Shown here one piece after another: positions 6,785 through 64,000 of a stretch of 64,000 bases of DNA. Each line of letters starts with the position of its first letter. Within the stretch, counting starts at the first letter, position 1. Source of the DNA: Haliotis rubra (lineage: Eukaryota); the NCBI RefSeq assembly GCF_003918875.1, contig NW_025767319.1:372001-436000 (forward strand). Direction: 5' to 3'. The notes under the pieces were generated by a model. That model saw nothing but the letters and a program-made list of their open reading frames with translations. It did no database searches and had not been told where the DNA came from. The position numbers and the translations under genes are program-made.

Positions 6785-6945
6785 AACGACAGTATTGAGA
6801 ATCTGATCGGCTTCAACATGATAAGCTACCGTTCATGCAAGAACCTATGGAAGTCATGTGTTGAACATCATACTTTCTTTCGCCTTCATCACCCAAACCC
6901 ACCATCCAAAAAGATCTTCTCAATAGGCTCCAAGTTCAGATATAG
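6785..6945 (+). CDS. PTPN4: PTPN3/4 FERM-C/FA exon (NDSIENLIGFNMISYRSCKNLWKSCVEHHTFFRLHHPNPPSKKIFSIGSKFRYS)
   Basis: ccag acceptor, ag|gtaaga donor, 161 nt; CKNLWKxCVEHHTFFRL and GSKFRY motifs. Confidence 0.96.
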
Positions 6946-8349: not shown

Positions 8350-8418
8350 CGGGAGAACTGAGTATCAAACGCTAGAGGAGGGTAAAAGAAGAGCCAAAAT
8401 AGACAGAACATTCTCCAG
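8350..8418 (+). CDS. PTPN4: PTPN3/4 FERM-adjacent exon (GRTEYQTLEEGKRRAKIDRTFSR)
   Basis: cttccag acceptor, ag|gtagga donor, 69 nt, phase 2 to 2; SGRTExQ FA motif. Confidence 0.93.
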
Positions 8419-16171: not shown

Positions 16172-16202
16172 GTATCTAGAAACAAGGCCAGAGTGTATCC
16201 AG
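16172..16202 (+). CDS. Candidate 31-nt microexon A (EYLETRPECIQ)
   Basis: ccccttctag acceptor, cag|gtaagt donor, phase 2 in, phase 0 out, no stop. Confidence 0.45.
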
Positions 16203-17880: not shown

Positions 17881-17906
17881 CCTTGTTATTCAGTTTCATC
17901 CAAATG
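17881..17906 (+). CDS. Candidate 26-nt microexon B (PCYSVSSKC)
   Basis: cctgtcttgttttag acceptor, atg|gtaagt donor, phase 0 in, phase 2 out; with A totals 57 nt, in frame. Confidence 0.45.
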
Positions 17907-21142: not shown

Positions 21143-22260
21143 TCGGAGTTCCAGCAGCATTTGTTGTTAACAGTAAATACCTTCATATGATAGTGGAATG
21201 GTCAATATCTTTTGTCTGAACCAGCTAAATAGGTTAATTTATTCTGAATTTGGCACATCAGACATAACATTCTGTGTGACCTAGCCCACAGTCAACAGAA
21301 AACCACACATCACACCTTGTATGTCAAGTAAATAACTTTAATAAAATATATATACATATGTAAATAGAACTGTTTGTTACATCCACAATACTCATCTTTA
21401 GGCATCTTTTCCAGATTATATATATTCTAATTTGTGCTTTAAAAACATTAATTTTTAACTCTTGGTTCTATAAATTGAGTTCAAGACCACCTGGATTTAA
21501 AGACATCTAATTCAATGCAGTTTAAAACAGTGGTCAATATAGTAAGAATTTGCTGCAGTCACAGAGACTGGGAGTTTTATACATCCAAGTCTGAGATAAT
21601 GGGGTTCAGCTCTATGTTTGTTTGTAGCATTATTTCATCACTAAGAATATGTTTGTTTGTAAGTTGATCATGCTACAAGTGGTATGTCGTAAGATTGTAG
21701 AGGTTTTCACAGAAGAAACAAGTTTTCCTGAAGATAGGTTTCAAAGAATTTCTATTTCTTTGATGAAGCAGCTATGAAGAATCTGGTGGGTCAGGTTGAC
21801 TTCTTTATCCTGCGTCCTACGACATATGCTGGGGGGTGATTAATTGTGCCATTGGCTCAGATCTGTTGTAACTGGCCTGATAACATTACCTGTTTAAAAC
21901 CTCTGCCTGTTGCCATACCTGTCTACCTGCCACCCCTTTGACCAATAAAGGACTGATCAGGCTTACAATAAATGTGTGAGCTGGATGAGATTAGTACTGT
22001 ATGAGAGGTGTGACAAGTGGTGTGCAGTAGTCCCAGGAGTGTGGTCAACAGTGGAAGCAGGGTAAACTGGCAGGTTTTGGGGTGGTGATATGTGCTGATT
22101 ACCTGTAGTTGGTAGGGTATATGGCGGAGGCTACCAGAGCCAACACGGAGCGAAACCCAGACATCCAGCGACTATCTCAAGTGTGGTCTGCTCAGACAGG
22201 CATGGGATATACTTTACCTGTCCACAACAGTTAACTTAATCCACGAAAATAGGGCTCTCC

Positions 22261-22292
22261 ATGGGAAAAAGTGCCAGTCTCATCTGTGGCAG
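22261..22292 (+). CDS. Candidate alternative first coding exon, MGKSASLICG(S), N-myristoylation-type
   Basis: tccATGG, cag|gtaggt donor, 32 nt = phase 2, matches the 46673 acceptor; MGxxxS plus Cys9. Confidence 0.6.
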
Positions 22293-25200
22293 GTAGGTGC
22301 AGTTGTCCTGGAAACAAACCATCAACATAGCTTCGAAAAATAGTATTATCAGTTATAATCATTATAATATGACATACCACATTAGCCATTGAGTCTCCAA
22401 TTAACATGATATCCGTACTGAAACCAGGAAATTAAATGTAAGATGTGTTTTTGTAAGTTTGAATGAGCTTTCATATACTTTTGATTGATACTGAGATGAA
22501 GACGTGTGGTAAGAAGCCGCTATGTACACAGGGTTGCCAGGTAGCTCCTGCAGATACTACCATGACTGAGGTGATATGTCAGGACATCACAGGGCTTTCA
22601 GTTTGTGACAAGGACAGAAGAGCCACAGATGCAACATGTTTCACAAATAAATGATACAAGCACCTACTATTACTGACGATGCCAACATACATTAAAAGAC
22701 TTGTCTTCATCATTCAATAATTCAAAAGAAGAAATATGGTGTATTTCATAAACCCTATGTCTTCTATGACATTTTGAATAGGTTTGGATTTTGAAAAAAT
22801 ATCAATCAGCATTTAATTAGAGATTTAATTCTTTCATCTACATCATACCTCTTATTATAAATTACAAAACAATTGATCAAATATGCCTTTGTTTAAGTGT
22901 GTTCAAGAGATACTTTAAGCCAATCAGCTTACAGAATTGTGTTCAGAGTAGCCTGTGAAGCTGTGTGTTTGATGTGGAGAAAGTATGCCATAACCTGTTA
23001 CAGAAGTGATTTGCACCGCAAGTCTTTGATAGGGTATTGAGGGTGTCTGCATCCATTACAGATTGTAGTAAGCTACTTGTCTTCAAGCCTCTAGGGCTGA
23101 CCTGGTAACAGTTGATTTAATGAAGGGGAAAATGTTGCAGTTAAGTGTAGGCTTGTCTTGGTAACAACACACAGTCTGTGTCATAATATTGGCTTATACA
23201 CTATAGTTATCACTGATTTCATATGTTCAAAGACAATATGGCCTTTTTTAAAATTAAAGTTATATTGTGTGTAGGATAATTTTGGGTTGAGTAATGCGAT
23301 CTAAATATATGATCAGTTTTCCCGTCCCTGTTTAACCATACATTTGTAGTAGACTTGCAGCCAGTGCTGTACTGAAAGTAAACTGATGTTACTTGGTAGT
23401 TAGTTTATAATGTTTGTTGAGTCATTCATTTAGAATGTGAGACTTGAAAGATTTGATCAAACATATTATGCTATTATAGTCAATGAAAGGGTTTTTTTTA
23501 TCATGAACAGTTCCATAGATGTGATTGTGTAAGACAGCCAACATGTCAGGGTGCTGCAGGGTACAGATACAACAGGCAAGCAGCAGCATTCCATCACTAC
23601 TCCCTGTACACCTATTGCATGGTCATACTTCACCAACTAGGCCTGGTCAACACAAACAGTTAGCCTTCCATCAAGCAGAAACTGGTTCATGGATGGCACT
23701 TGTGCAGAATAGTTGTCCACAAGTAGTATGTTTTGTCTTCAGTTGTGCTGGCTACCTCAGGTTTTTAAACATGTCATATGTCATTCAGGTTCACAGAGAC
23801 CTGTGTGTACTGACTGACCAGTATCCCACTGACAAAACTTGACTTCATTTGGAATCTATGGGCTTCAGTTAATAGACACATTCATTCTTTTTAACTGTTC
23901 ATTTCCCTTCTCACTTTAGACCCAGTGAGGAAAGTGGTTGCCCAGGTAGATATACCTTGTAGAAAGCACTGCATGACAGTTGAAGGACAAGTGATAAAGG
24001 TAATAAAATGGGCAACTTTAGAGATCAGTTGATTAGGGCGGTAGCATGGCCTATGTTGCACACCTGGTTTGGACGTCAGGTCAGCACTAGCAAAATATTT
24101 CTCTCCCCCTCTTTCTCTCTTCTCCAGCCCCCCCACCCCCCAGCCCCCTAACTTTAGTCTACTGGTTCAACAGTAGGTGGTCAAGAGATGGAAGGATTGG
24201 CGGTCATGGATGCAACAGGTGGTCATGCTGGATGGAGACTATTGGCAGTCAGGCGAAATGGAAGGATTGGCAATCATGCTGGATGGAGATTATGGTGGTC
24301 ATGCTGGTTGCAAGATGGGGACAATAGGTGTCATGTTAGATAGACACAATGGGCAGTCATGCTTGATGGGTATTGACATCATGATAGGATATATAGATCT
24401 TGTAAAGATATACCTGACTAAACTGGACTTCGGTTAATTTGATGGCTTAATTCTGTCACGGCAATGAGTTATTTGTGTGATATAAAGCTTTCCTGTTCAG
24501 TCCACCATTATTGTCCATGCTGTGTTACAGTGTTAATCCCTGTAGTACCAGTCATTCAGATATGACATGCTGAGGGCACCTGCCAGCTTTCATTTTAAAA
24601 AACAGTCAGGCTGACTTGTACTTATTTACTTCTCCAGCCATATACACCAGACTGATCTATAACAATATATATTGATGAATGCTGACCTATTAAGTGTGGA
24701 ATTCATGAATGAAATGATACTTCTTTGTAAGTGTAGCATGTTTAGTTATTTGTCTCTCACACATCTGACAAAGTATAATGAACAGATATATAATTGTGAG
24801 AAGCTGACATGTTGTTCCGTCTTTGCTATTTTAAGGACACACTGAAGGAAGGTTTTACAAAAGCGATCAGCATTAATGTTGTTTCCTTCACCTGACTTGT
24901 GAATCAATACATGTCAACTAGAATGTCGTAAATCAGGTTTTTATACTGCTGTTCAAATATAAAGAGACCCATTGCTATGTTTAGGTTAAGTCGATTTAAA
25001 AAGATTGAAATTACAAGTTAATGGTTACAATGGTTAAAGTGGAACTTGTGTCTGTGTCTCTGCCTGTTACAATGCACTGTGTGACTGTGATTGTTGATTA
25101 TCACCGGTTACTTTGTCTAATTGGTCGTTACAAAGTCATGATAAGGTGGTAACTGATACACTCCTTACATGCAATGATTCAACACACTTTACAATAAACA

Positions 25201-27625: not shown

Positions 27626-27820
27626 TCTTCGCCCAGTGAGCAGGATGTGAGAGCGCCTGTGTCTCCCTACACACTATATCCTTTGATTATTCTTATTTAG
27701 TTACCTCTTTTAGTCATCTATAGAGGTTTAGCTAGTATCCTTCAACATTATGTATTGATATTTATTCGTATTTCTGCTGTTTATTCACGGGACGCCGTGA
27801 TTGTTCAGTAGTTTACGTTG

Positions 27821-30175
27821 ATGAAAATCTGTACTGTTTGCAGGTTACGTTTTTCTGCTGCTGATCCGCATTTAATATGCCCTAGCTGTACTGCACCATG
27901 TTCATTTTCTTCACGTTGCAGTTACTGTAATAATTTGTCTAATTCTGCTTTTAACAAATATTTACTTTGCGTTTTGAGACGCGCAGCAGATAGGTCACGT
28001 AAGCAGAGTCTAGCCATGGCTGATACATCTGAACCCCTCGCCAGTCAACTGCTGTCGGACGACCCCCTCCCGTCTGGTGTTCCGCTAGAGTTACCCTCGG
28101 AGGAGAGGCGTGGGACGCAGTCCGCCGTCTCCAAGAAGCGTCCTGCATCCCCAGACATCCCGTCGTCGCAGCCGAAGACTAAGAGGGCTTCTACTTCAAC
28201 TCAACGCAGACTCCGCACCCCAGGGCAGCGTCTACCTCCAAGGGGAAATCGGCGAAGTCTACAAGGACTTTCTCAGCTGAGATTGTTCCGCCGCCAGAAC
28301 TGGGCCTGTATGATTATCAGCCGATCATCATACCTGATGTGCATCACAAGAAAGCGACCGGTGTCGGCAACAGTGGCGTCAGCGCGCAGATCTACACGCA
28401 GCCTGATGTACCAGCGCTGATGTCTGATGATCTTCCTGAGGGTCCCGTCGCTACCAACGCAGATAGGGCAGCAACTACATCTTCGCAGACCGTCCCAGAC
28501 GACCTGGTTCTTCAGATTATGAAGATGATGGAAGACCGCTACGGACTGGAGAGACAACCAGCCCAGAGCCTGAGCCTTACGAAGGCTCCAACGTAGACGT
28601 CACCCCAGAGGGACCCCCCCCATCAACGTAGCGGCTGCTACCAAGTCATCGCTGAGGAACCCACCTGCGCGAAGGACGTCACAGCCCACCTCTGCGAAGG
28701 ACCCAGATGTTCAGCGTTCGCGAAAGCCTTCGCGAAGGACATCTAGATCGTCACCTACCTCGGACTCCGATGATCAATGCTCACGAAGAGGTTCGCGAAG
28801 GAAGATCCTCTCATCCCCGGACTCTGACTCGGACCCCCAGCCTTCGCGAAGGTCAAGTCGTCACTCCCCAGGACCGGACTCAGATGAAGCTTCGCGAAGG
28901 GCACCAGTTACAGGCTCCAAGTCATCTTCGTCTAGAAGGTCATCGAGGGATTCCCCAAGAGCTTCGCAAAGCTATCATCGTTCACCACATAGATCTCCGC
29001 GAAGGTCACCATACAGACGCAGCTCGTCAGGCCGTTCTCCACGTCGATCTCCTCGCCGTTCTCCACGTCGATCTCCTCGTCGTTCACCTCGTCGATCTCC
29101 TCACAGGTCACCACATTGTTCGCCTCACAAGTCTTCACGGAAGTCCCCAGACAGGTCTCCATTGACGTCACCCTGCAGAGCTGTACAAGTATACAGGACT
29201 CCACCTCAGTCACCATCGGAAGAGCATCAACCTCTTATCAGCGATCCCGTTACAGAAGATGATGGAGGCATCATATACTCCGACGCAGAAATACGCTACT
29301 GGATGGTTAACAACCTGGACCTATCTTCACCTTCCAAGAACGGTAACCCGGCCCACACCTATCTCATGAGGGAGGACGGCGCGCAGACACGATCACCCTA
29401 CCTCCGATCGACCCGATAGCAGCGGTCCCACAGAATCTGGACACAGCCTTCCATAAAGCCACTAAAGCCCAGGCGCCGCACTTACCACAGTTCAACGCCA
29501 AAAAGTTCTCAGCCCATAATATGGACCCATTTTTCAAGGCACAATAAATCGACGATAACTTCAAAGTCATCAACGATGCCAAGACTAAGATGTACAAGAT
29601 AGACGACCGCAAGCTGGTTCAGATCGAAACCATGACAAGAAGAATGTTCTTCGGCCTTAACAGATCAAGAACGATTAATGAAACTCTCATCACCAGATTT
29701 CGAGATTCTACATCAGAAGACGACAGAATGATATACTCGGCCCTCCTTATGCAGAAGAAGGACCAGCAGTTTTTAACGGATCATCTTACATCAGTCTCCG
29801 CAGCGCTAACTCTGGCTCGTTGTCAAGGTCTCCTGCAGTTGGGGTGAACAGTTCACATCTTCACTCTACACAGCCCCGTGGTCTTTGCCGTCAATCTTCG
29901 CTGGAGGAATAGATAAAGTCTCTAAAGAAGTCACCAAGGATTCAAGGGAAGTCCTTATGATAAAGTTGATGTACACGCTAGCTAGCGTCATCAGGCAGAC
30001 ATCACAGAGATATTCAGGAAGATCAAAGTTTACTGGCTTACAGAAAGCACGGGACAGGAAGATGGCCGGTTCAAGAGGAGGAAAAGATTCTTTTCGTAAG
30101 CCCATCACGGCAACTACAGGGGGAGGATCTGGAAGAGGCAGAGCACCCAGAGGCTCCCGCAACTATAAGCGATGA
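27821..30175 (+). pseudogene. DIRS gag-like ORF1, frameshifted and with stops
   Basis: N-terminal Cys/His finger (CTVC..DPHLICPSC..CSYC), low-complexity middle, RG-rich C-terminus; split across several ORFs. Confidence 0.75.
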
Positions 30176-31914
30176 AAGGCGGTTTGAGCGACTGGAGTCT
30201 TCCACCCCAGCCGTTCCAGTACAACCATCACAAGTGGGTGGGCGCCTTCAACTGCACTGGGAGAACTGGGGAATTCTACAGGATCCATATGTCTCCAACA
30301 TCCTACAACACGGATATCGAATCCAACTACAGGCCATGCCTCCGCTTACAGTCAACCCTCACAAGTTCGACTTCCAGGCTCAACAACTACCAAAGTTACG
30401 AGAAGCTGTTTCATCTCTCCTAACCAAGCAGGCCATAGAAGTACTGGATCAAGTAAACATCGAACCAGGCTTCTACTCCCCAGTTTTCCTAGTGCCCAAG
30501 AAAAACTCCAAGGAAAAGTTCGACTCATCTACAACATGAGCACGTTCAGCAGAGATTATCTACGCCAAACCGTAGCGTTTGCATGATACATCTACCTCAA
30601 CTACTGCACCTAGTTTGTCCCATGGACTACATGGCCAGTATAGATCTGCAGGATGCTTATCTACATATCCCGATACATCCCGAATCCAGGAAATGCCTAC
30701 TGTTTACACTAGACGGGCTGCATTACCAATGGAGAGTACTGCCATTTGGAATATCATCGGCCCCCTGGTTGTTCAAAAGAGTAACGAAACCTATCGTCAC
30801 TTACCTACATCGTCAAGGGCTACGCAGTGCGTTCTACCTCGACGACGGGATTCAAGTAGATCAAGATCCACAGCGTCTCAAACTACAGTTAAACTTCATC
30901 ATCAAGCTACTAACGCAGCTAGGATGGTTAGTAAATCTACTCAAGTCGGACCTAGAACCTACGACAAGATCTGCAATTTCTAGGCGTTCGATTTCTCACG
31001 ACACAGAACCGTATCGTCGTACCGGAGGACCGATGGCTCAAGATCCAACAGACCATCCCACAAGCCTTACTCTCTCCGCTACCACTACGACAATGGCAGA
31101 GTCTGTTGGGTCTCCTCACGTCAGCCCAAGACATGAGAGTCAGAGGCAGACTACAGTTACGTCCGTTACAGGTCCTCATCAATGCTCATCTCGACGACCT
31201 ACAACCATTCAGTCTACCGAAGCACATCAGACCTCATCTACTATGGTGGACCAGGAGGTTGAATGTCTGTGAAGGCATCTATTTAACAGAGCCGGAATTC
31301 AAAACCCATCTCTATGTAGACGCGTCGCTCCAAGGTTGGGGAGCTCATCTCGCCAACTGGACGGCATCAGGGTTATTGAACCAGCAAGAGAGCAAGCTGC
31401 ACATAAACATGCTAGAAATGAAAGCAGTAATCAACGCCCTACTATATTGGAGCACCATTCTACAGAATGCGCATCTAATGATTCACACCGACAACTCAAC
31501 AGTGACGTTTTATATAAACAAACAAGGCTCAATGAGATCATTGAACCTATTGACTCTATGCTTTCAACTGTTCGATCTAATCGACGATCTCAACATACAT
31601 GTCAGAGCATGTCACATTCCTGGAGCCAAGAATGTACTAGCAGACGCACTCTCTCGGCCACATCTACCGTCACCGACAGAATGGATGCTCCATACAGAAA
31701 TCTTTGCACAGATTATCAAGGAAATAGGAGCTCCGCTAGTAGACCTATTCACCACTCGCTTCAACAATCAGCTAACAACATTCGTATCACCAGTCCTGGA
31801 TCCACAAGCGTGGGCAACGGACGCACTAAGCATATCCTGGGAAGGCCTCAACGCGAAGCGTTTCCGCCGCCAGCGCTAATTCCAAAGGTGTTACAGAAAA
31901 TAAAGTGTGTCTAA
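30172..31914 (+). pseudogene. DIRS reverse transcriptase - RNase H - truncated methyltransferase-like domain
   Basis: VGGRL..W, FYSPVFLVPKK, IDLQDAYLHIPI, LPFG, YLDD (30835-30846), VDAS..GWGA, HINMLE, TDN, N..ADALSR, DLF..AFPP; several frameshifts. Confidence 0.93.
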
Positions 31915-32961
31915 ACAAGAGAGGTTATTCAGCCAGAGCGGCGAAAGCAGTCACGCTTGCTTTACGCAGTTCTAGGCGCAACTTGTATGACGACAAGTGG
32001 CACAGTTTTGAGACATACGCTGTTAAAAAGGGATTTACAGCTAGAAATGCTACATATCCACAAGTGGCTGACTACCTTTGTTACCTACGACAAACTAAAC
32101 GTCTAAAAGGCTCGACATTGTCAACATATCTCGCAGCTCTAAGTTCAGTGATAACTATGAGAACGGGTGTCAAGTTAACTAAGACTCCAGAGTTACTGGC
32201 CTTGCTATGTTCATTCCGATTGGAGGATCAGAAACAGAGATTTCGCGCTCCAGCATGGGATCTAAATGTAGTGCTCCAACACCTCACAAGTGAGGCCTAT
32301 GAACCACTGGAATCAACATCGTTTGAATTTCTGACACAGAAAACATTGTTCCTGTTATCCCTAGCAATGGCAGCCAGAAATTCACGCTCTAGATTATGAG
32401 AAAACACGTTTCGATGACAATCAAAACATAGTGCATATGGGACTGCGATGGAACTTTATCGCCAAGAATCAATTGCCAGGTCAACCAGACAGATTATTCC
32501 ATATCCCTGCACTTTCCTCAATTTCTCGGACCTCATGATATGCTTGACCTATCATTATGCCCAGTGAGAGCACTCAAAATCTATCTACAACGATCCAAAA
32601 CGAGGCGACGACAACTCAAGCGGTTATTCACCCCTCTATCGACAGCGACTCAGACCGAAGTCTCTCGTACCACGATATCGATATGGATCAGAACTGTCAT
32701 ACTTCATGCCCAAGTAACAAGGCTGCAGGACTCAACCCTCCAAGAGCATCTACTCCCCATGAAATCAGAGCACTGGCTTCGACACCCGCTCTACACGGAA
32801 ATTGCTCGTTGAATACCATTATGGAGGGCTGCTTTTAGAAATCCGACATGGTGTTTGCTAACCACTATCTGAGGGATATCACCACCGAGGACGTCTCAGG
32901 TATTCACCATTTCAGTCCCATGGTCCTCGCACAGCAGTTGACAGTCCCTCGTAGACGATGA
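31905..32961 (+). pseudogene. DIRS tyrosine recombinase, frameshifted
   Basis: PAWDL..VL, KTLFLLSLA.AAR, LCPVRAL..Y, HEIRALAS, F.NHYLRD; in-frame TAG at 32836. Confidence 0.9.
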
Positions 32962-33335
32962 GACATAGTCTCACGAGATTATTCTGTATATATCATACCA
33001 GTATTATCTAGCTTATAACTCTACGGAGTTTTGTGCTAATTATATACATATCTTAAGTCTACATTAGTCTTAAGCCCAGTACTGATGTTACATGTACATT
33101 GGGTCGCTTCTCCACTTTGGAGTCGCTTTTATACTATTATTATTATTATCATATTATCTAAATATTGTAGTACCCCCATCTATGGCAGCTGGTAGAACTT
33201 ATGTATTATAGCAGCAGGAATTATCTTAATTACAGTGCCATTATGAAGTTCCCGTAGGAGGTTATTACATATATAAATCACTAATTATTTAAATCCAAAG
33301 TATTCTGTTTCCCACCTCCGTTTCCGTAGGATTCT

Positions 33336-44904: not shown

Positions 44905-45840
44905 GTATTCTGGTTATTTCGAATGATAGATGTTGTATCCTGGTTGTTCCCAACAGTAGGTGTTTTATCCTGGTTATTCCCAATGGTAGATGTTTTATCC
45001 TGGTTATTCCCAACAGTAGGTGTTTTATCCTGGTTCTTCCCAACAGTAGGTGTTTTATCCTGGTTCTTCCCAACAGTAGGTGTTTTATCCTGGTTATTCC
45101 CAATGGTAGATGTTTATCCTGGTTATTCCCAACAGTACATGTTTTATCCTGGTTATTCCCAACAGTAGGTGTTTCATCCTGGTTATTCCCAACAGTAAAT
45201 GTTTTATCCTCGGTATTCCCAACAGTAGGTGTTTTATCCTGGATAATCCCAACAGGAGGTGTTTTATCCTGGTTACTCCCAACAGTAGGTGTTTTATCAT
45301 GGATATTCCCAACAGTTGGTGTTTTAACCTCGGTATTCCCAACAGTAGGTGTTTTATCCTGGTTATTCCCAACAGTAGGTGTTTTATCCTGGTTATTCCC
45401 AACAGTAGGTGTTTTATCCTGGTTCTTCCCAACAGTAGGTGTTTTATCCTAGTTATTCCCAATGGTAGGTGTTTTGTCTTGGTTATTCCCAACAGTAGGT
45501 GTTTTATCCTGGTTATTCCCAACAGTAGGTGTTTTATCCTGGTTATTCCCAATAGTAGGTGTTTTATCCTGGATAATCCCAACAGGAGGTGTTTTATTCT
45601 GGTTACTCCCAACAGTGAGTGTTTTATCATGGATATTCCCAACAGTGAGTGTTTTATCCTTGGTATTACCAACAGTGGGTGTTTTATCCTGGTTATTCCC
45701 AACAGTAGGTGTTTTATCCTGGTTATTCCCAACAGTGGTGTTTTATCCTCGGTATTCCCAACAGTAGGTGTTTTATCCTGGTTACTCCCAACAATAGGTG
45801 TTTTATCATGGATATTCCCAACAGTAGGTGTTTTATCCTG
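44905..45840 (+). repeat. 30-bp minisatellite (cctggttattcccaacagtaggtgttttat), about 31 copies
   Basis: Direct reading. Confidence 0.97.
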
Positions 45841-46672: not shown

Positions 46673-46814
46673 TGATGGGGGTTTCTTGTCGCACAACACA
46701 TCACGGGACACATATCCGGCACCTGCTCCAACCAAGGTTGTTAACTTCAACTCCTCAGAAGAGAACACTAGATCGGATCAGTACTATGATATTCCTGCAT
46801 ATGAAGAGTATATT
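46673..46814 (+). CDS. PTPN4: PTPN3/4 linker exon (DGGFLSHNTSRDTYPAPAPTKVVNFNSSEENTRSDQYYDIPAYEEYI)
   Basis: tttctttcag acceptor, att|gtgagt donor, 142 nt, phase 2 to 0; bridges the phases of the 12589 donor and the 63827 acceptor. Confidence 0.8.
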
Positions 46815-47922
46815 GTGAGTATATGCGCTGTGTCATGTAACTATTAAGGCAACTCATATTATCTAATAATTCAATGTGCGTTCATTGTTAAGACTGACCA
46901 GTCCCGGCTACAGAAAATGATATGTTGTACAGCATAGTTGATGGAAGTCTGTTTTTGTGCAGTGTGTGAATGAATGTTCCCTTCCATGCACCAGACAGTA
47001 CACAGTAAAGAATTAATGAGTGGTGGGTTTATGGGGCATGCAGTACACTGGCTTGTGTGTCCAGGGAGGATTCCTGACATGGACAAACTGTTATCTAGAC
47101 TTTCTGTGCTGCATATTTAATGCTTAATACCTCCACAACTTCCATCATGACTACATCATTTAAGATGTGTTGGAGGAGACATTAGAAGTTGTTGCAGTAT
47201 CACAATCAGTACATGTTGTTTTATTTTTCATGTCAGGGTTTGTACCACAAGTTGGATGTCAGTGGTAGTAAACCAAGCAAGGCACACATGATGGTCATAA
47301 AACACATTTATAGAATTAATTAATTGAGTGTGCATGCTACACAAGAAAATATGGTAGCTTTTTCACTTGATAGTAAGAATATTGTAGGAGGTGGGAACCA
47401 CAGGAATGGAATGTCCTACTAAGAGTTGAGAAATAAGATTATGCATCAATATTGAGTGTTCAGGCACATTAGGTCTTGTCTGGAACGCTTTGTTTTTATC
47501 TCCCAGTAAGAGCCAAGCCTTGTCAACATCGATCCTCTTGGAGCTTGTCACCCTTGAAGTATGACAATTAACATTTGCTGCTTTATCCATTCATTTTATC
47601 AATTGAGACACAGTGTATGTGTGTTCATAGTGTCTTTCAATCTAATTATGCAAACATTTCAGAATTTTCCCCTTAATTGATTTTCACGCACATATTTTCC
47701 CAGTTTGGGAAGGAAATTGCTTTCCTCTAAGTGAGTAGAATAATTCAGTCATGAAAACAGCCCCTACACCATAGGGATTCACATAGCAATATTCCTGTTG
47801 TTACTGCCAGATCATAGAGCTATGATCTGAAGACAGTGTCAAGGATTTGCATACAACATTCAGTGTGTGTTGAAGGTGCCCCATATTATGAAAACAGTGC
47901 CCCACAATAGAGGATACCACAG

Positions 47923-48555
47923 ACTGAAGTGCTGTGTTGGACTGTGTGCCTGAAGTGCTGTGTTGGACTGTGTGACTGAAGTGCTGTGTTGGACTGTGTG
48001 CCTGAAGTGCTGTGCTGGACTGTGTGCCTGAAGTGCTGTGTTGGACTGTGTGCCTGAAGTGCTGTGTTGGACTGTGTGCCTGAAGTGCTGTGTTGGACTG
48101 TGTGCCTGAAGTGCTGTGTTGGACTGTGTGCCTGAAGTGCTGTGTTGGACTGTGTGACTGAAGGGCTGTGTTGGTCTGTGTGCCTGAAGTGCTGTGTTGG
48201 ACTGTGTGACTGAAGGGCTGTGTTGGACTGTGTGCCTGAAGTGCTGTGTTGGACTGTGTGACTGAAGTGCTGTGTTGGACTGTGTGCCTGAAGTGCTGTG
48301 TTGGACTGTGTGCCTGAAGTGCTGTGTTGGACTGTGTGACTGAAGGGCTGTGTGCCTGAAGTGCTGTGCTGGACTGTGTGCCTGAAGTGCTGTGCTGGAC
48401 TGTGTGCCTGAAGTGCTGTGTTGGACTGTGTGCCTGAAGTGCTGTGTTGGACTGTGTGCCTGAAGTGCTGTGTTGGACTGTGTGCCTGAAGTGCTGTGTT
48501 GGACTGTGTGCCTGAAGTGCTGTGTTGGTCTGTGTGACTGAAGTGCTGTGTTGGA
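47923..48555 (+). repeat. 26-bp minisatellite (ctgaagtgctgtgttggactgtgtg[c/a]), about 24 copies
   Basis: Direct reading. Confidence 0.97.
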
Positions 48556-49217
48556 GTATTGTGTGTGTGAAGTAATGTGTTGGTCTATGTGCATAAACTT
48601 TGTGTTGAAACCATGTGCCTGAAGTACTGTGTTTGACTGTGTTAGAGGTATTGTGTCAGATTTTGCTTGTAGTATTGTGTTGTACATTGCTGTATATACT
48701 CAATAGGAATGTGTGTATCGCCTATGAGAACACTGTCGTAATGGAGGACAGCCCAAACTGAAGGAAGTATTGTTTAAGTGGACTGTGTCAGTCAACTGAC
48801 TAGAACAGAAAGATGACTGTTTAGAAGTTTGATCCTCATGGGATTTGTTTGGGCAACTCTACAAGTTTTATCTTTTGTTTGTAAAAGTGCAAGTCTTTGT
48901 TCTTTGTTAACCATTAAGAGTAACATGATTAACATACATACTGTTATAACCAGAGCAGTCATGATGAGAAATCATGTGTCTTCGGTTGTTATTGGAGACA
49001 CAGGATTTATGATTTTGTTGATTAGAGTGTGTGAGGGGGATGTGGAGCAGTCTGTAATTAGAGGATGAAGTTACAGTCAGGTTACAGACAGTTGATGAGA
49101 TTAGGCCGTTGACAGACAGAAGGTGAATCAATACTAGTGTATATCTTCATTAGTATGGCCTGTCAAGATACCTTGAAAACAGGCACAAGAAACCACGACA
49201 TGGTGCTACATCTGCAG

Positions 49218-49698
49218 TAGAATACAGACAGGGGACAGCTGGGGTCAGTCCATGGTGATACAGGTAGTGTAGAATACAGACAGGGGACAGCTGGGATCAG
49301 TTCATGGTGGAACAGGTAGTGTAGAATACAGACAGGGGACAGATGGGGTCAGTCCATGGTGATACAGGTAGTGTAGAATACAGACAGGGGACATCTGGGG
49401 TCAGTCCATGGTGATACAGGTAGTGTAGAATACAGACAGGGATATCTGGGGTCAGTGCATGGTGATACAGGTAGTGTAGAATACAGACAGGGGACAGCTG
49501 GGGTCAGTCCATGGTGATACAGGTAGTGTAGAATACAGACAGGGGACAGCTGGGGTCAGTCCATGGTGATACAGGTAGTGTAGAATACAGACAGGGATAT
49601 CTGGGGTCAGTGCATGGTGATACAGGTAGTGTAGAATACAGACAGGGGACAGCTGGGATCAGTGCATGGTGGTTCAGGTAGTGTAGACTTTAGACAGG
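49218..49698 (+). repeat. 52-bp minisatellite, about 9 copies
   Basis: tagaatacagacagggg recurs every 52 bp. Confidence 0.97.
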
Positions 49699-53303: not shown

Positions 53304-55295
53304 GTGAGTGGAGTTCAGCCAACACAAGCCACCCTTCCTTGTTCCCTCTGGTATTCAGGAGCAGGGTACACTACCTCGCTATAGCACACAGCAATATTCA
53401 CATGTGTTACTTCTGTAGTGTTGCTGCTGTGGGGAAAAATTGTTCAAATTGGACAATTAATAGTTCATGTGAATTTTTTTTTATCAGAGGCTTTGCTGTT
53501 AGCTTGGAAACATTTTGCCTTATAAAGAATATAGCGACACTATCAGTATACATTTAAAATCCTGATGTTTTCATGAATGAAATGTGGGCATTGAATTTGA
53601 CTTCATGTAGGTAAACAAGCCAGTAATGCATTATTGACAGATATAATTTTGGATATGTAGAAGCCTTTGTATGACATAACCTAAAAATAGCATTCAGGTA
53701 AGGAGTTAGGAGCCATACCACAGAGCCAGCGAGGTAGCGCACGTCACAGTTGGTGTATTGTGTTATGAATGTATGCAGGGTCGTGTCACTGGTCTACATA
53801 CAGGCCTGGTAGAGTGAGGCTGTCTCTTTAAACGCTAGACATCTACCAGGATCAGGGGCTCCGGTAGGGGCCTTACAACTCCACTGAAGCGGGGATCCCA
53901 GGCAGGATCATGAGACATAGGCAGAAGGGATTAGGACAGTCGGGATAGTCCACAACTGAAGCCTGACTGCACTGAACAGTGTCACCGATTACTGAGAGGA
54001 CTGCCAAAGACTGGGATATTGCTGTCTTATCAAGGGACCAAGCTTACTTGAACAGCAATAATGGAAGTACATCATTCTTTTCATTCCCCTAAAGTATTCA
54101 AATATGGTTTTGTGCGGACAGACCTGTGATGTATGGAATTGGACAGCTATAAGACTGTATGTATTCAGGGGTGCTTGAAACTGGATTCACTGAGGGTCAA
54201 GTGATTATATAAGTGTGGATCCGGAATGTGTGTTTCAATGGTGTAACCCACATTGACACTCGTTTATAGCAGAGTGCATTCCATGCATGACATCAGTAAG
54301 ACTAGAATCTGTCAAGGGGCCTGTTGAAGTCGTCTGTCAGCAATAGCAGTGAAGTTTTTAGTTGTAAAAGTCTGCAATAGCCCTGATCAGCTGCCTGGGC
54401 TTAAAGTCTGTGTCAGCGTAGTCATAGTGAGAGAGGTGTGCCCTGATTGTCTCATCAAAATGTACAAAGCTTTCCTGTAAAGTAAAAATGGCCTTACTTG
54501 ATTCAGCTGACTTTACAGAGTTTGTAACGGCTGGATAATTGTTTTCAAGAGGTGACTAGCTGGGGAAAAGTTGCCTGGACAGTGTGTTGTGTGATCCCCC
54601 CTGTTGTGGACTATACTGCTGATAGATTGGATACATTGGATGATACCCAAACCTTTCCACAATTCAGAAGAGGATTTTGTTTTGAATCGATAACAAGGTT
54701 TTCATAGCAGGAAGGGATATCCCTGTGACAGGACTAACCACTTGCTCTGCCAGATAATGCAGAGTCTATAAAAGGAATTACAGATATTTATTACACAAGA
54801 TAACGCGTCCCTTATTTTGTGTGACACTTGGCTAATGTGGGACACAAGTTAAGGAAGGTGTTTGTGAAAGATGTGGAGTGGTTTTAATAGAAAAGTTGTG
54901 TCATGAGAATGTGGGTGTTTGTGTCATCTCTTCTGACAACTGTTCAAGCATTGGAGGAAAACATAGCATGTCAACACAAGTAGATGTTTGACTTCAAATT
55001 GGATCAAGTAATTGACGTAATATGCATCAACTGGCAAACACAAGAGCTTGTTCAGCTTAAGAACAGGTTATGATTATCAACAATATTCAGGTTTACGTAT
55101 GTGATTACTCCAGATACAGCCATTGTTAACATACCTAAGGATTACTGTGTAAGAATATACCATCCAGGTGTCGAAGGTTGTACTGCTCAGTTTGAAGCAA
55201 GTGGGCAAAGGGATTGATTGTATGGTAAGAAAATATAATTTTTGGGTATATAGAAACATTTTAGAGAGGATCTTGTGGTGTCCCCACTTAAACTG

Positions 55296-56570
55296 ATGGT
55301 GGTCACAGAGATGGTGGTGTTTATGGCGAGTCCATTTGAGCGTGGATCACAGGCTTTTAGGAAGGAGCAAGTGTTCCAGCTTGTCCGATCCAGAAGTGTC
55401 AGACACTCTGTAAAAACTGGCAGTGGTGAAATTGTGACGACTCAAAATGGAGTTCAGCCCGAGTCTGCTGGGAAGAGAGGAGACACAAAGCCGGAAAACA
55501 GTGTGGTGCAGGAGAAAATTTCACCAAGAAGGGTTGCTAATGGTTCAGTCCAGACTGGTCTTTATTCTCGAAGTAGGCATAAAAGCTTCGAGCATTTACC
55601 CACCTCCCAAACTGTGCATGATGATTATAAGGTCCTACAGTCTTCCAGTTCTGTAGATTCTGAATTAGATAAAACAGATTCATCAGAACAATCTGATAAG
55701 AAAGTTTTACCAATGATACTTAAAAAGAAAATCAAAGTTATACGAGGGAAAAAGGGCTTTAGAATAATTTCAGGTGACAAGGGACGTTCATCTATTAGTG
55801 CTCAAAGACGCTCCTTATTAAGTGCTAATGAAGAAGTGCTCACACAAAGTGCTCAAAGCAGACCTGAATCAACAGTCTCTGTATCTGATCTCACTCATAG
55901 CCATGACAAGTCTGTTGCTCGACGTAGTAGTGATCATCCACATGTGCCAAAAACTACAACAGAAGTTGATAAAGGAAAAGGAACCAAGTCACGAGTTTCA
56001 TGGTTGGACCAGGAAAAACATCCTCAATTCCAGGCAAAGCTATTGGCTGAGCATCTTCCTCAGTCAAATGTTTTGCCAAAGAAAGACAAGGTGAAAAAGT
56101 CAGTTAAATTTCAGCTAGACAAAATAGAAAGTGATCAGTTAAAATACATTGGAGATAAAGTGTGTGTTGGACAGAGTGATAGTGAACTGATGCAAGTTCC
56201 CCGGGAAACAGGGTTCCAGCTGATAGGGGTTCAGAGAGATTCTTCAGTGGAGAGATTGAAGAGAGATGTAGAGAACCGACTACATGTGGATGGAAAGACC
56301 CATTCTGATGGAGGTGAAAAGAAGGAAAATAGTTTCACTGTGAAGCCTGTTGGAACATCCCAAAGATTGCTCAGATCTGGTGCCTCTTTTTCTGGTGTTA
56401 CAAAACAGTCTCTAACAAAGGAGAAGGTAGTTTCAGGATTTGTGCGTAGGAACAGCATCAAATCCCTTCAACCAGCCGAGCATCAGGACAGCAAGCTGGT
56501 TGTACGAAGATGTGTTATTGGAGGTGCCCTTACATTCAGAGTTGTTCAGCTTCCACCTGCATATGAAGGA
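55296..56570 (+). CDS. Large alternative exon (~425 codons, K/S/R-rich, probably disordered) in frame with the PDZ exon
   Basis: 1.3-kb stop-free non-repetitive ORF in AT-rich intron; gga|gtaagt phase-0 donor 36 nt before the ORF end; in-frame ATGs at 55296/55311/55323; TATAAAAGG at 54767. Confidence 0.72.
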
Positions 56571-59500
56571 GTAAGTGAGGGCTATTTCAGGGATGTTGGC
56601 AGATGAGTAGAACTTAAGAAGGAAGTGTTTTTTAACAATTACTTCTGTCAAGATAAATGCATTCATCTGGGAACACTTGAGCTCCTAGTGTTCTTTGGTG
56701 TGCTGTATGTAATTGATTGAAATATTTAAGTGACATGTTGTTATCTGCCATAAGACATGCAGGTTTGCCTGGAGTCATAGAAAACTGTCAGTCATTGCCT
56801 GTGTTCATTATAGGAACTACATTGACATTGTTCAACGCTAGCTAGTGTCTTTACATGTATGAAACCTCCAGACCAGCCTTGATATGGTCCAAGTTGATTT
56901 GACCAGTGTCAACTGATCAGTTATTTGAGGTATGATGGAAATGTAGGGGTTGAGGGAAGTTTAGTAAACTGTGGCCAGTGTGTGTCAGGCTGACTGTCAC
57001 CTCACTGACCTAGCTATACATCAGACTTAATGATACTAAAAACAATCAGTGTTTAAACTTAGCTTTGGAGGTTATTGTTTAAGATATGAAAGAAATATGT
57101 GTCTAGTTTCAAGCAGAGTGAGTGATGTTCAGTTTGTCCATGACACATGCCATGTTAATGTAGGCTGACACAAGCATGACACATGTTCTGATCATGCCCC
57201 ACCTCCAAGAGTGGACCTGCTGCCACACATTCACTCCTACCTTCAGTCACAAATACCTATGTTCCTACTTAATGTCTTTTTCATTCAGTGTGAAGTTTTT
57301 CTTTATGTAATTCAAGGAGTAATAGTTGAATTAGAACGTTCCATCTGTTCTGGATGATTAGGTCTGTTTCTTCTTGTGGTAAAGAATGTGTCTCCAACTG
57401 AACATTGCAGGTGGGCGTAAGCAGATGTGTATAGCAAATGTTACTCACCTTATACTTCCGTTTACATGGGCTTTCTATTGTCATGTTTTTATTAGTTCTC
57501 AGTAGCATTTACATAGAATACAAATGCTCAGTGCAGTGTAGTGGTAATAATTTGAAAGCCATGTTGAGTATACGTTAGCATTGTGTAATGTCAATGAGTT
57601 GTATGATACATGCCCTGCATGCAGGGCTTCTGTATGTCAGGGGTATTTATAGAGGGCATTAAGTAAGGTGAATCTGGTATGTCGGACATGCAGACAGGGA
57701 GATGGTTGCCGGATTACATGTGACTGGCTTTGTGCGGTTGAGGCTGGCGCCTCTCCCAGCTCTACCTGCACCGATCAACTATGTGGCAGGAATTCACCAG
57801 GTCAGCGTCTACATTCAGTGAAGGGACATTTATAAGCATGACATGCATGCAGATATATCATGTCATACACAGTGTTTTGCAGTCGAGCTTTATTTATGAT
57901 GCCTGTAAATATACCAGCTGAGGTCTCACATAAATGAAGGAAATAAATTCTGTCAGCTGAGGTTATGAACATGAAGTTTAATCTTCTTCATTATATTTTC
58001 CTCAAAGCTGTCTTTCCTGTTAGTTTGCACAGTTCAGATATTGCTCACTGAATTGATTTTTCTGAATGCTTCCTTTCCTATAAGCAGTGTTCTGCCTTGC
58101 AACCACAAAACGGCCTGCAAGAAATTACAGGGCTTAAAAGAGTTGACAAACTAACTGGAGAAGTCATGTGGGTTAGATAAACTGATTTGTGTGTGTAGCT
58201 GCCATTGGATGATAGGGCAAGCAACTTCAGCGGTCTCATGTCTAGCTTTCTCCATCAGTGGACTCGCAAAGGAAGAGTACTTTCATCAATGTCATTCCCT
58301 TGGCACAATACCTCTTCATCTTATGAGGCCAGATTGATAATAGAAGAAGGAAGCATAAAGCCTAGCATAGAGACTCCTTGAAAGTTTTATCACAGTTTGA
58401 TATTAAATGAGGACTCATTAATTCAATCACTATTCCCTACTTGTTCACACTGGCTGTTTGTATTTCGAGATGCCTCTAAAACTGGCAGATTATTGTGGAT
58501 TTAGGCCTGGACATTGATGATTGTCATAAATCCTGTTTAGGAGGACATGTGGACAGAGCTGGGACATCCCTTCCTTGTCACATCTGTCCCCTTGTCAGGT
58601 TGGCCTTGTCTGGCCACAGGACCACTATCATCACTGGACAAACACTTCGTCTTCCATTGTCTGAAACAAAAACTCGAAACATTTATGGTTAGCTTATGGT
58701 TGTTGATTCTTTCAATTAGGAGAAAGGTTTGCTAGTAATCCTTCATTTATTATGGGATTTGTTGGTCCATTGGGCAGCAACTTATTGTACATTGGTCAGT
58801 GAAGCCTCAGTGGATCTTCAGATGGTGACAGAATGGTCAGCCGTAGCCTGTATTTGAGTTTCACAATGGATGGTGGGTGCTGTTGGTGGGATTACCATGA
58901 TTGAAAGCCATTCAGCCAGGATAATGAGCGTATCAACACTCAGTAGTAACAGCTTGTTGATCATCGGACATAGTTCACAGTCACACTTAGGAAATCTATC
59001 ATATTCTGAGAGTTGGACATCCTGTCTTCTTACACATTTCAAAGAATAATGAATACAGACCCTTGAAAGAATGTTTTCAGAAGGGTTGTATCTGGACCTG
59101 CTCAGTGGCTGATGTTCGACCCCTTCATCTACAGTTAGTGTCTGTGGAAATGCAAACTTGTAATTAAATGTTTCCCAATTCAAGTTAATATAGCTATGAC
59201 TAATCTTTTCTCTTTCTTATGTTACATCTCAAATAAGAATGAAGATGCTTATTTTACATTATTGCATTGAATACAATGCTAGAATACCTCAAAATTTAGG
59301 ACAATAAACAGTTTCCCTGCCAAGGTATCTTAGTTTGGAATCCCAGATAAATCTGTGGCAACCTGTCTGTCTGTATACCTTTCTGGAGCATCATCATCAC
59401 CACTCTGTTCCTGCTTCTTTCACAACATTAGGCTGCCTGTTGGTACTTTCTACTGGTTGGGATAGGTTTTTGTGTTAATTTTTATAGGTAGAGTTGATGG

Positions 59501-63826: not shown

Positions 63827-63916
63827 TCTAATGGGAATGGTTATGCTGATGGACATGGGCTGGTTACCATCAGGATGACACCAGACGACTTGGGCAGGTT
63901 CGGCTTCAATGTCAAG
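63827..63916 (+). CDS. PTPN4: PTPN3/4 exon starting the PDZ domain (SNGNGYADGHGLVTIRMTPDDLGRFGFNVK)
   Basis: tttgtttcag acceptor, aag|gtcagt donor, 90 nt, phase 0; LVxIRMxPD..GRFGFNVK is the PTPN3/4 PDZ start. Confidence 0.94.
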
Positions 63917-64000
63917 GTCAGTGTACATACATCAGTCACACAAATATTGATAATTGCATTTTTGAAGCAGATTAAAAAGGTTTTGGTTTAGTTTTGTTTT

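What the first reader, a model, noticed from the sequence alone, without database searches (positions are those of the whole stretch)
22261..22292. Ten-codon exon encoding a myristoylation plus palmitoylation signal
Seen: ATG GGA AAA AGT GCC AGT CTC ATC TGT GGC AG|GTAGGT, giving MGKSASLICGS-DGGF.. after splicing to 46673. Known: Met-Gly-x-x-x-Ser is the N-myristoyltransferase consensus and a nearby Cys is often palmitoylated. Inference: a lipid-anchored, FERM-less PTP-MEG isoform, which I do not know to be described for this family.
Basis: partly seen in the sequence, partly recalled or inferred. Interest (0 to 1): 0.75.

Follow-up and report, generated by a model that had tools for sequence, protein, structure and literature searches.

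The report
Lipid-anchor start exon in abalone phosphatase
Inside a long intron of an abalone PTPN3/4-type tyrosine phosphatase gene lies a real, conserved start exon that is spliced onto the downstream exons, skipping the membrane-binding FERM domain and giving an N-terminus (MGKSASLIC...) that looks like a fatty-acid anchor signal; the lipid attachment itself is only predicted.

Summary
ATGGGAAAAAGTGCCAGTCTCATCTGTGGCAG|GTAGGT is at 22261-22292, and the acceptor cag|T is at 46673. One contig of a transcriptome-sized run (X1) lies on 22165-22292. It then continues with 30 letters that match 46673-46702 at 29 of 30 positions. X1/X2 contigs cover only 22036-22292, with nothing in the intron behind.

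The exon ends in the same codon phase (AG|) as the FERM_C exon (6945) and the FA exon (8418). The ATG frame runs open through 46673-46814, 55269-56570 and the PDZ exon 63827-63918. The 92 bases 22227-22318 are held word-for-word in four organism labels and in part in four more. The wider 321 bases are held at only 0.28 in organism C.

So this is very probably a genuine alternative first exon giving a FERM-less isoform. Gly2, Ser6 and Leu7 fit the N-myristoyltransferase pattern. Lys3 occurs in known substrates such as ARF6, hippocalcins and NCS-1 MGKSNS.

Translation from this ATG, both lipid modifications and the PTP domain are inferred, not shown. An upstream ORF sits in the leader. FERM-truncated PTPN3 isoforms are known. 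I found no report of a lipid-anchored one.

The parts
21758..22047 (+). Conserved block just upstream of, and overlapping, the 5' end of the exon. It is the putative core promoter, with an inverted CCAAT at 21851-21855, CCAAT at 21942-21946 and a TATA-like AATAAAT at 21967-21973.
   Evidence: Organism C (X6, about 93% alike overall) shows only one listed difference (21899) in these 290 nt, against about one event per 22 nt elsewhere in 21402-22420. The motifs were read. Promoter function is inferred, and the motif matches are weak evidence.
22036..22292 (+). Alternative first exon as covered by RNA-like contigs. This is the minimum extent; the true start site may lie some tens of bases upstream.
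   Evidence: X2 record 5 covers 22036-22255. X1 records 1-4 cover 22075-22292. There is no loose end on the 5' side and no X1/X2 coverage at 21400-22026 or from 22293 on.
22121..22234 (+). Upstream ORF in the leader (37 codons, different frame, stops 26 nt before the main ATG). A second upstream ATG at 22090 is specific to the window's allele.
   Evidence: One search lists the ATGs. One search shows 22090 A>T in X1, X2, X3 and X6, and a 2-nt deletion at 22140 in organism C that shifts the uORF frame, so its peptide is not conserved.
22237..22239 (+). In-frame TAA stop upstream of the ATG. It makes ATG 22261 the first start codon in the gene's frame.
   Evidence: It lies inside the conserved 92-nt block.
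22261..22292 (+). Coding part of the exon: M G K S A S L I C G plus AG, the first two bases of a Ser codon completed by T46673.
   Evidence: Splicing is shown.
22293..22298 (+). Splice donor, CAG|GTAGGT.
   Evidence: The X1 contig leaves the genome exactly after 22292.
46673..46814 (+). Shared linker exon. T completes the Ser codon, then DGGFLSHNTSRDTYPAPAPTKVVNFNSSEENTRSDQYYDIPAYEEYI. It ends in phase 0, with donor GTGAGT at 46815.
   Evidence: The first 30 nt are seen joined to 22292 in X1. Frame.
55269..56570 (+). Large linker exon of 434 codons, phase 0 in and phase 0 out. The acceptor sits in an AGAGAG run, and only 55269 keeps the frame after 46814.
   Evidence: The query, the ORF 55275-56606 covering all but the first two codons of this exon, has no relatives in 1.84 billion representative proteins. 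Whether the short isoform includes it is not shown.
63827..63918 (+). First PDZ-domain exon: SNGNGYADGHGLVTIRMTPDDLGRFGFNVK.
   Evidence: The best solved-structure matches are PTPN4 and PTPN3 PDZ domains. It is in frame with the short isoform.
6785..6945 (+). End of the FERM_C domain (...CKNLWKSCVEHHTFFRL...GSKFRY AG|). The new first exon bypasses it.
   Evidence: Pfam FERM_C 1.5e-10. Best PDB match is PTPN3 6t36 at 2.3e-13. Sequence.
8350..8418 (+). FERM-adjacent (FA) exon, (S)GRTEYQTLEEGKRRAKIDRTFS AG|. It has the same donor phase as 22292 and is bypassed by the new first exon.
   Evidence: The Pfam FA model starts at the end of the preceding exon.

Best explanation
The stretch 22036-22292 is a genuine alternative first exon of an abalone PTPN3/PTPN4-type (FERM-PDZ-PTP) gene. 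It is driven by an internal promoter in the roughly 28-kb gap between the last upstream exon candidate (17906) and exon 46673. Its last 32 nt encode MGKSASLICG plus two bases of a Ser codon. Splicing to 46673 joins this in frame to the linker and PDZ exons and, presumably, to the PTP domain. The product lacks the FERM and FA domains that normally hold the enzyme at the membrane and cytoskeleton. After Met removal, Gly2 would be N-myristoylated co-translationally, with Ser6 and Leu7 favourable and Lys3 tolerated. Cys9, next to Leu7-Ile8, could then be S-palmitoylated at a membrane. That would replace the FERM-based attachment with a lipid anchor. Shown here: the exon, the junction, the reading frame, the conservation and the gene's identity. 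Inferred: that it is a first exon, translation from this ATG, both acylations, and the downstream PTP domain.
For: Junction: X1 record 4 aligns to 22165-22292 and continues with 46673-46702 at 29/30 identity. Exon-limited coverage: X1/X2 lie only on 22036-22292. Both runs are transcriptome-sized, at 75-78 Mb of contigs against about 1-1.5 Gb for the DNA-type runs. No loose end or coverage appears on the 5' side of the exon. Frame: the exon ends AG| like the FERM_C exon (6945) and the FA exon (8418). The ATG frame stays open through 46673-46814, 55269-56570 and 63827-63918, with or without the big exon, and an in-frame TAA lies at 22237. Conservation: 22227-22318 is held 5/5 words in organisms B, C, D and E, and 3/5 in A (both RNA-like X1 and DNA X21), F, G and a mollusc metagenome. 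The wider 22100-22420 is held at only 0.28 in organism C. For X1, 3/5 is what full identity up to 22292 would give, because only 36 of the 62 words end before the junction. A nearly invariant 290-nt block with CCAAT and TATA-like motifs lies just upstream. Gene identity: Pfam FERM_M, FERM_C and FA hits, with best PDB matches to PTPN3 FERM and PTPN4 PDZ. Motif: about a dozen human NMT substrates have Lys3, and Gly-Lys peptides are myristoylated on Gly (PMC7048800). NCS-1 begins MGKSNSK and its N-terminal region contains a myristoylation site (PMC5004852).
Against: Only one short contig shows the junction, and the run's RNA nature is the tool's guess. The contig reaches only 30 nt into exon 2, so the rest of the isoform is a model. 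The leader contains an upstream ATG at 22121 with a 37-codon uORF that ends 26 nt before the main ATG. The main ATG has T at -3, a weak context. The older PROSITE myristoylation pattern excludes Lys after Gly (own knowledge). Cys9 is further from Gly2 than in classic Cys3-Cys6 dual-acylation motifs (own knowledge). The 92-nt conserved block is not statistically remarkable alone: about 0.7 gaps of that size are expected by chance at the local divergence. A pyrimidine-rich stretch followed by AG at 21959-21960 could be an acceptor, so an internal exon is not fully excluded. No protein with this N-terminus was found in the databases, though those searches were length-limited.
Confidence: 0.6

Rival explanations
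1. The alternative first exon and its splicing are real, but it acts mainly as a non-coding leader. Ribosomes would be captured by the uORF at 22121 or would start at a downstream Met, for example in the big linker exon. No MGKSAS... protein would accumulate, and the exon's role would be promoter or translational control of a FERM-less product.
For: The uATG 22121 has the same context quality as the main ATG, and its uORF ends only 26 nt upstream. A matching frame has a prior of about 1 in 3 by chance. The MGxxx[S/T] motif is common, with 11 in this window. No database protein has this N-terminus.
Against: The ATG is in the single frame that continues into the PDZ. An in-frame stop precedes it, and it lies inside the best-conserved part of the exon, while the uORF peptide is frame-shifted in organism C. 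uORFs are common in translated animal mRNAs (own knowledge).
Confidence: 0.22
2. The stretch is an internal cassette ('poison') exon of the FERM-containing mRNA, entered through an acceptor upstream of 22036, for example the AG at 21959-21960. It would bring stop codons into the frame and lower expression instead of making a new N-terminus.
For: A pyrimidine-rich tract at 21900-21945, a branch-like CTGAT and an AG at 21959-21960 precede the exon. The conserved upstream block could reflect splice signals. The contigs are low-depth, so their ends are not true transcript ends.
Against: No X1/X2 contig covers 21961-22035. No loose end to an upstream exon is seen at 22036 or 22075. CCAAT and TATA-like motifs are spaced appropriately for a start near 22000.
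Confidence: 0.12
3. The ORF and GT arose by chance in an intron. The contig would then be an assembly chimera, or would come from a genomic retrocopy or deletion and not from spliced RNA.
For: The run type is only guessed to be RNA, and a single contig shows the junction.
Against: Coverage in X1/X2 is confined to the exon. The run sizes are transcriptome-like. The exon block is conserved across species labels.
Confidence: 0.04

Closest known systems
PTPN3 (PTPH1) and PTPN4 (PTP-MEG1), including the N-terminally truncated PTPN3 isoforms
   Same: The gene has the same architecture: FERM_M, FERM_C and FA exons, a long disordered linker, and a PDZ whose start best matches the PTPN4 and PTPN3 PDZ structures. 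Human PTPN3 has isoforms with truncated FERM domains. Proteolytic removal of the FERM domain raises its activity (PMC10185773).
   Different: The described human isoforms only lose FERM sequence and are expected to lose membrane targeting. Here a dedicated first exon adds a new 10-residue N-terminus with an acylation-type motif. The linker also carries a 434-codon exon without detectable relatives.
N-myristoylated proteins with Gly2-Lys3, such as NCS-1 (MGKSNSK...), the hippocalcin family and ARF6
   Same: The N-terminus has the form Met-Gly-Lys-x-x-Ser. MGKSAS differs from NCS-1's MGKSNS at one position.
   Different: There is no homology beyond the motif. These proteins are not palmitoylated at a Cys9. 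Modification of the abalone peptide is untested.
Alternative-promoter PTP isoforms that change membrane attachment, such as STEP61/STEP46 (PTPN5) and the PTPRR isoforms
   Same: One gene uses alternative promoters to make isoforms that differ in their N-terminal membrane-targeting element while keeping the catalytic part (PMC9900141).
   Different: Those use transmembrane segments. Here the predicted element is a lipid anchor that replaces a FERM domain.
Dual-acylated SH4-type N-termini, such as Src-family kinases and G-alpha-i/o subunits
   Same: A myristoylated Gly2 is followed by a nearby Cys that can be palmitoylated once the protein touches a membrane (own knowledge; G-alpha-o paper listed).
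   Different: The classic motifs have Cys at positions 3-6. Here the only Cys is at position 9, so palmitoylation is less certain.

Membership tests
PTPN3/PTPN4 (FERM-PDZ-PTP, PTP-MEG type) | N-terminal FERM domain followed by an FA region | tested here: met
   Pfam FERM_M 3e-4 and FERM_C 1.5e-10, with the start of FA. The FA exon GRTEYQ...DRTFS is at 8350-8418. The best PDB hit for the FERM_C piece is PTPN3 6t36 at 2.3e-13.
PTPN3/PTPN4 (FERM-PDZ-PTP, PTP-MEG type) | A single PDZ domain between FERM and PTP | tested here: inconclusive
   Only the first 30 residues of the PDZ lie in the window (63827-63918). They match PTPN4 PDZ (2cs5, 2.5e-5) and PTPN3 PDZ. Pfam PDZ did not score on so short a piece.
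PTPN3/PTPN4 (FERM-PDZ-PTP, PTP-MEG type) | C-terminal classical PTP catalytic domain | not testable with these tools
   It would lie beyond base 64000, outside the window.
N-myristoyltransferase substrates | Initiator Met followed by Gly2 | tested here: met
   ATG GGA at 22261-22266, with an in-frame stop upstream at 22237.
N-myristoyltransferase substrates | Small or hydroxyl residue (S/T/A/G/C/N) at position 6 and no Pro at position 7 | tested here: met
   Ser6 (AGT) and Leu7 (CTC).
N-myristoyltransferase substrates | Acceptable residue at position 3 | tested here: inconclusive
   Lys3 is excluded by the PROSITE pattern (own knowledge). It is present in about a dozen verified human substrates, which are myristoylated on Gly (PMC7048800; NCS-1).
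N-myristoyltransferase substrates | Myristate actually attached to Gly2 | not testable with these tools
   This needs metabolic labelling, mass spectrometry or an in vitro NMT assay.
Dual-acylated (myristoyl plus palmitoyl) N-termini | Cys close to Gly2, typically at positions 3-6 | tested here: inconclusive
   The only Cys is at position 9, preceded by Leu7-Ile8. That is plausible but outside the classic spacing (own knowledge).
Alternative first exon (internal promoter) | Spliced to a shared downstream exon in a compatible phase | tested here: met
   The junction 22292>46673 is in an X1 contig. The donor phase AG| is identical to the donors at 6945 and 8418.
Alternative first exon (internal promoter) | Transcripts begin at the exon, with no upstream junction | tested here: inconclusive
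   Contigs stop at 22036 and 22075 without loose ends, and none lies upstream. Contigs cannot show true 5' ends.

The most novel reading that the evidence does not exclude
Abalones, and perhaps other molluscs, keep a conserved internal promoter. It turns a FERM-PDZ-PTP phosphatase into a myristoylated, possibly palmitoylated, PDZ-PTP enzyme. That would be the first lipid-anchored member of the PTPN3/4 class. A reversible acyl anchor would replace the FERM domain as the membrane-targeting device, and the enzyme would probably be constitutively more active because the FERM part is absent.
Probability: 0.4. Interest if true: 0.55.

Novelty: new variant of a known kind. Interest (0 to 1): 0.45.

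Why it matters
PTPN3/4 enzymes are thought to reach the membrane-cytoskeleton interface through their FERM domain, and removing that domain raises activity in vitro. A natural isoform that swaps the FERM domain for a lipid anchor would show a second, switchable way of placing the same PDZ-PTP module at membranes. It would also give a simple handle, through G2A and C9S mutants, for separating localisation from FERM-mediated regulation. It is a concrete case of an N-terminal micro-coding exon that automated annotation may miss. Its reach is limited, because it rests on a non-model mollusc and on prediction for the lipid step.

Tried and rejected
1. An exhaustive protein search with the 443-aa linker ORF gave 0 hits, so no full-length orthologue could be fetched to anchor the gene model or look for annotated isoforms.

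2. A word-index search with the 58-aa exon 1+2 peptide found no candidate, but only proteins of 32-101 aa were eligible.

3. A tiling alignment A1 (exon 1+2 peptide overlapping the big exon, 492 columns) was used as a longer query. It gave no hit at E<=0.01. This blank says nothing about proteins outside the eligible length range, such as full-length FERM isoforms.

4. Rfam found nothing in the window.

5. Pfam found nothing on the exon-1 ORF, on the big exon or on the short PDZ piece.

6. A BLAST of 21700-22420 against the whole window found only itself, so the exon is not a repeat within the window.

7. A strict GT[AG]AGT donor scan missed the real donor GTAGGT, so I dropped it as a chance estimate.

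8. Paper searches for PTPN3/PTPN4 with myristoylation returned only unrelated co-mentions. PTP-FERM with C. elegans gave one irrelevant paper.

9. Read laying allows one call, so I could not lay reads on exon 2, on the FERM>46673 junctions or on runs X22/X23.

Full report
**1. The observation**

The sequence read by the first stage is exact. ATG GGA AAA AGT GCC AGT CTC ATC TGT GGC AG occupies 22261-22292 and is followed by GTAGGT. At the proposed partner...ggtttctttcag|TGATGGGGGTTTCTTG... puts the first exon base at 46673.

That exon runs to 46814, with donor GTGAGT at 46815. It is 142 nt: one base that completes the Ser codon, then 47 codons.

An MGxxx[S/T] start is common. There are 11 on the two strands of this window. 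The motif therefore proves nothing on its own, and the case rests on independent evidence.

**2. RNA evidence**

A search for public runs holding 22100-22420 returned large DNA-type runs of several organism labels. It also returned two small runs (X1 and X2, 75-78 Mb of contigs) that the tool guesses to be RNA. Laying X1, X2, X3 and X6 on 21400-23100 gave the decisive result:

- **Junction.** X1 record 4 (161 nt) aligns to 22165-22292. It then continues for 30 letters, TGATGGGGGTTTCTTGTCGCACAACACGTC. This is window 46673-46702 with a single mismatch. The junction predicted from sequence alone is present to the base.
- **Exon-limited coverage.** X1 and X2 contigs together cover 22036-22292. They cover nothing at 21400-22026 and nothing from 22293 onward. 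The DNA-type runs X3 and X6 continue straight through into the intron.
- **No upstream junction.** No loose end is seen on the 5' side of the exon.

This is the pattern expected of an exon of at least 257 nt whose 3' end is a used donor. Three caveats apply. Only one contig shows the junction. The run type is a guess. Contigs cannot show true transcript ends or strand, so the GT..AG pair is what sets the strand.

**3. Gene context**

All exons below are on the + strand:

- **FERM_M.** The exon piece at 2417-2674 matches Pfam FERM_M at 3e-4.
- **FERM_C.** The piece ending at 6945 matches Pfam FERM_C at 1.5e-10, and the FA model begins at its end. Its best solved-structure match is human PTPN3 (6t36, 2.3e-13).
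- **FA exon.** It lies at 8350-8418 and encodes (S)GRTEYQTLEEGKRRAKIDRTFS.
- **PDZ start.** The exon 63827-63918 encodes SNGNGYADGHGLVTIRMTPDDLGRFGFNVK. Its best matches are the PTPN4 and PTPN3 PDZ domains.

The gene is therefore of the PTPN3/PTPN4 (PTP-MEG) type. The PTP domain itself lies outside the window. Earlier notes of this scan call the genome blacklip abalone; I did not test that.

The intron holding the new exon also contains a broken RT/RNase H retroelement at about 27.8-33 kb and several minisatellites.

**4. Frame logic**

The FERM_C exon ends ...TAT AG| at 6945 and the FA exon ends ...TCC AG| at 8418. The new exon ends ...GGC AG| at 22292. All three donors carry two bases of a codon, and the acceptor at 46673 supplies the third base (T, giving Ser).

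From ATG 22261 the frame stays open through 46673-46814 (phase 0 out) and 55269-56570 (phase 0 in and out). It then continues into the PDZ exon at 63827. This holds with or without the 1.3-kb exon.

An in-frame TAA at 22237-22239 precedes the ATG. The predicted product is MGKSASLICG-S-DGGFLSH...EEYI-[434-residue linker]-SNGNGY...PDZ. It lacks FERM and FA entirely.

For the big exon, only the third AG of a ttAGAGAG| run keeps the frame (exon start 55269). This differs by four bases from the start given in another note on this window.

**5. Conservation**

The 92 bases 22227-22318 are held as follows:

| Organism labels | Sampled 31-mers held |
|---|---|
| B, C, D, E | 5 of 5 |
| A (DNA run X21 and RNA-like X1), F, G, a mollusc metagenome | 3 of 5 |

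The wider 22100-22420 is held at only 0.28 in organism C. That figure agrees with the differences listed. Those differences leave only two clean blocks, 22164-22222 and 22227-22318, which predicts a share of 0.31.

For X1, 3/5 is what identity up to 22292 would give, since only 36 of the 62 possible words end before the junction. The same 3/5 in DNA of organisms A, F and G suggests that divergence begins right behind the donor. That last point is my inference.

At the local divergence of about one event per 22 nt, a 92-nt clean block is not significant on its own. About 0.7 such gaps are expected by chance.

The 290 nt at 21758-22047 are more striking, with a single listed difference in organism C. 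This block holds CCAAT at 21942, AATAAAT at 21967 and an inverted CCAAT at 21851. Those positions would suit a start site near 22000, about 35 nt upstream of the first RNA-covered base. I read this as a probable promoter, while noting that motif matches are weak evidence.

**6. Points against translation from this ATG**

- The leader has upstream ATGs. The one at 22090 is absent in X1, X2, X3 and X6, where A is replaced by T.
- The ATG at 22121 opens a 37-codon uORF that ends 26 nt before the main ATG.
- A 2-nt deletion in organism C shifts that uORF's frame, so its peptide is not conserved.
- The main ATG has T at -3 and G at +4, a weak-to-adequate context.
- A pyrimidine tract followed by AG at 21959-21960 leaves some room for an internal-exon reading.

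**7. The lipid signal**

Gly2, Ser6 and Leu7 fit the NMT requirements. Lys3 is excluded by the old PROSITE pattern (own knowledge). However, PMC7048800 states that about a dozen human NMT substrates carry Lys3, among them ARF6 and the hippocalcin family, and that such peptides are myristoylated on Gly.

NCS-1 starts MGKSNSK, and its N-terminal region contains a myristoylation site (PMC5004852). MGKSAS differs from it at one position.

Palmitoylation of Cys9 is plausible next to Leu7-Ile8. It lies outside the classic Cys3-Cys6 spacing (own knowledge). Neither modification can be tested with the tools available here.

**8. Comparison with what is known**

Human PTPN3 has isoforms with truncated FERM domains. 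Their localisation is unstudied, and proteolytic loss of the FERM domain raises activity (PMC10185773). Alternative promoters that change membrane attachment are known for PTPN5 (STEP) and PTPRR (PMC9900141).

Searches combining PTPN3 or PTPN4 with myristoylation gave only unrelated co-mentions. A search for a tyrosine phosphatase, N-myristoylated, with an alternative first exon gave nothing.

The protein database searches were blank. They were limited by protein length and by what the collection holds, so an existing gene model with this N-terminus cannot be excluded.

**9. Verdict**

| Claim | My probability |
|---|---|
| Exon and junction are real | about 0.93 |
| It is a first exon driven by an internal promoter | about 0.8 |
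| It encodes the N-terminus of a FERM-less isoform | about 0.6 |
| Myristoylation, given translation | about 0.8 |
| Palmitoylation of Cys9, given myristoylation | about 0.5 |

This is a new variant of a known kind: an alternative-promoter isoform of a known phosphatase family with a predicted lipid anchor in place of the FERM domain. It is moderately interesting and can be tested cheaply.

Noticed in passing
window 27800-33000: A GC-rich (48-53%) retroelement sits inside the same intron, on the + strand. It has reverse transcriptase (RVT_1, 8.5e-14) and RNase H (4.7e-9) ORFs split over several frames, so it is probably a decayed retrotransposon copy.
   Followed up: partly
window 55263-55269: The acceptor of the 1.3-kb linker exon lies in a ttAGAGAG| run. 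Only a start at 55269 keeps the frame after 46814. A start at 55265 would hit a stop within nine codons when joined to 46814.
   Followed up: partly
window 55269-56570: This 434-codon open exon is rich in Ser, Lys and Arg. The ORF 55275-56606, which covers all but its first two codons, has no detectable relative in 1.84 billion representative proteins. It may be a lineage-specific linker insertion or an exon missing from annotated models.
   Followed up: partly
window 16172-16202 and 17881-17906: Two candidate micro-exons (31 and 26 nt) have good splice sites and together keep the AG|/T phase between the FA exon and 46673. Skipping both also keeps the frame. No RNA evidence was obtained.
   Followed up: partly
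window 44906-45840, 47924-48642, 49217-49698: Three minisatellite arrays (periods 30, 26/52 and 52 nt; 31, about 28 and 9 copies) flank exon 46673-46814. They create long spurious ORFs on both strands.
   Followed up: no
window 22090: The window's allele has an extra upstream ATG (a two-codon ORF). All four laid runs (X1, X2, X3, X6) read T at this position, so it is a private or minority variant.
   Followed up: no
runs X22 and X23 (organism F): Two further small runs (80-90 Mb of contigs, 2025) hold 3 of 5 words of 22227-22318. That is the share expected for exon-only (RNA) coverage, so the exon may be expressed in another species. I could not lay them.
   Followed up: no
window 46740-46814: The shared linker exon ends in a Tyr-rich acidic stretch (SDQYYDIPAYEEYI) that resembles tyrosine-phosphorylation or SH2-docking sites. 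It was not examined.
   Followed up: no
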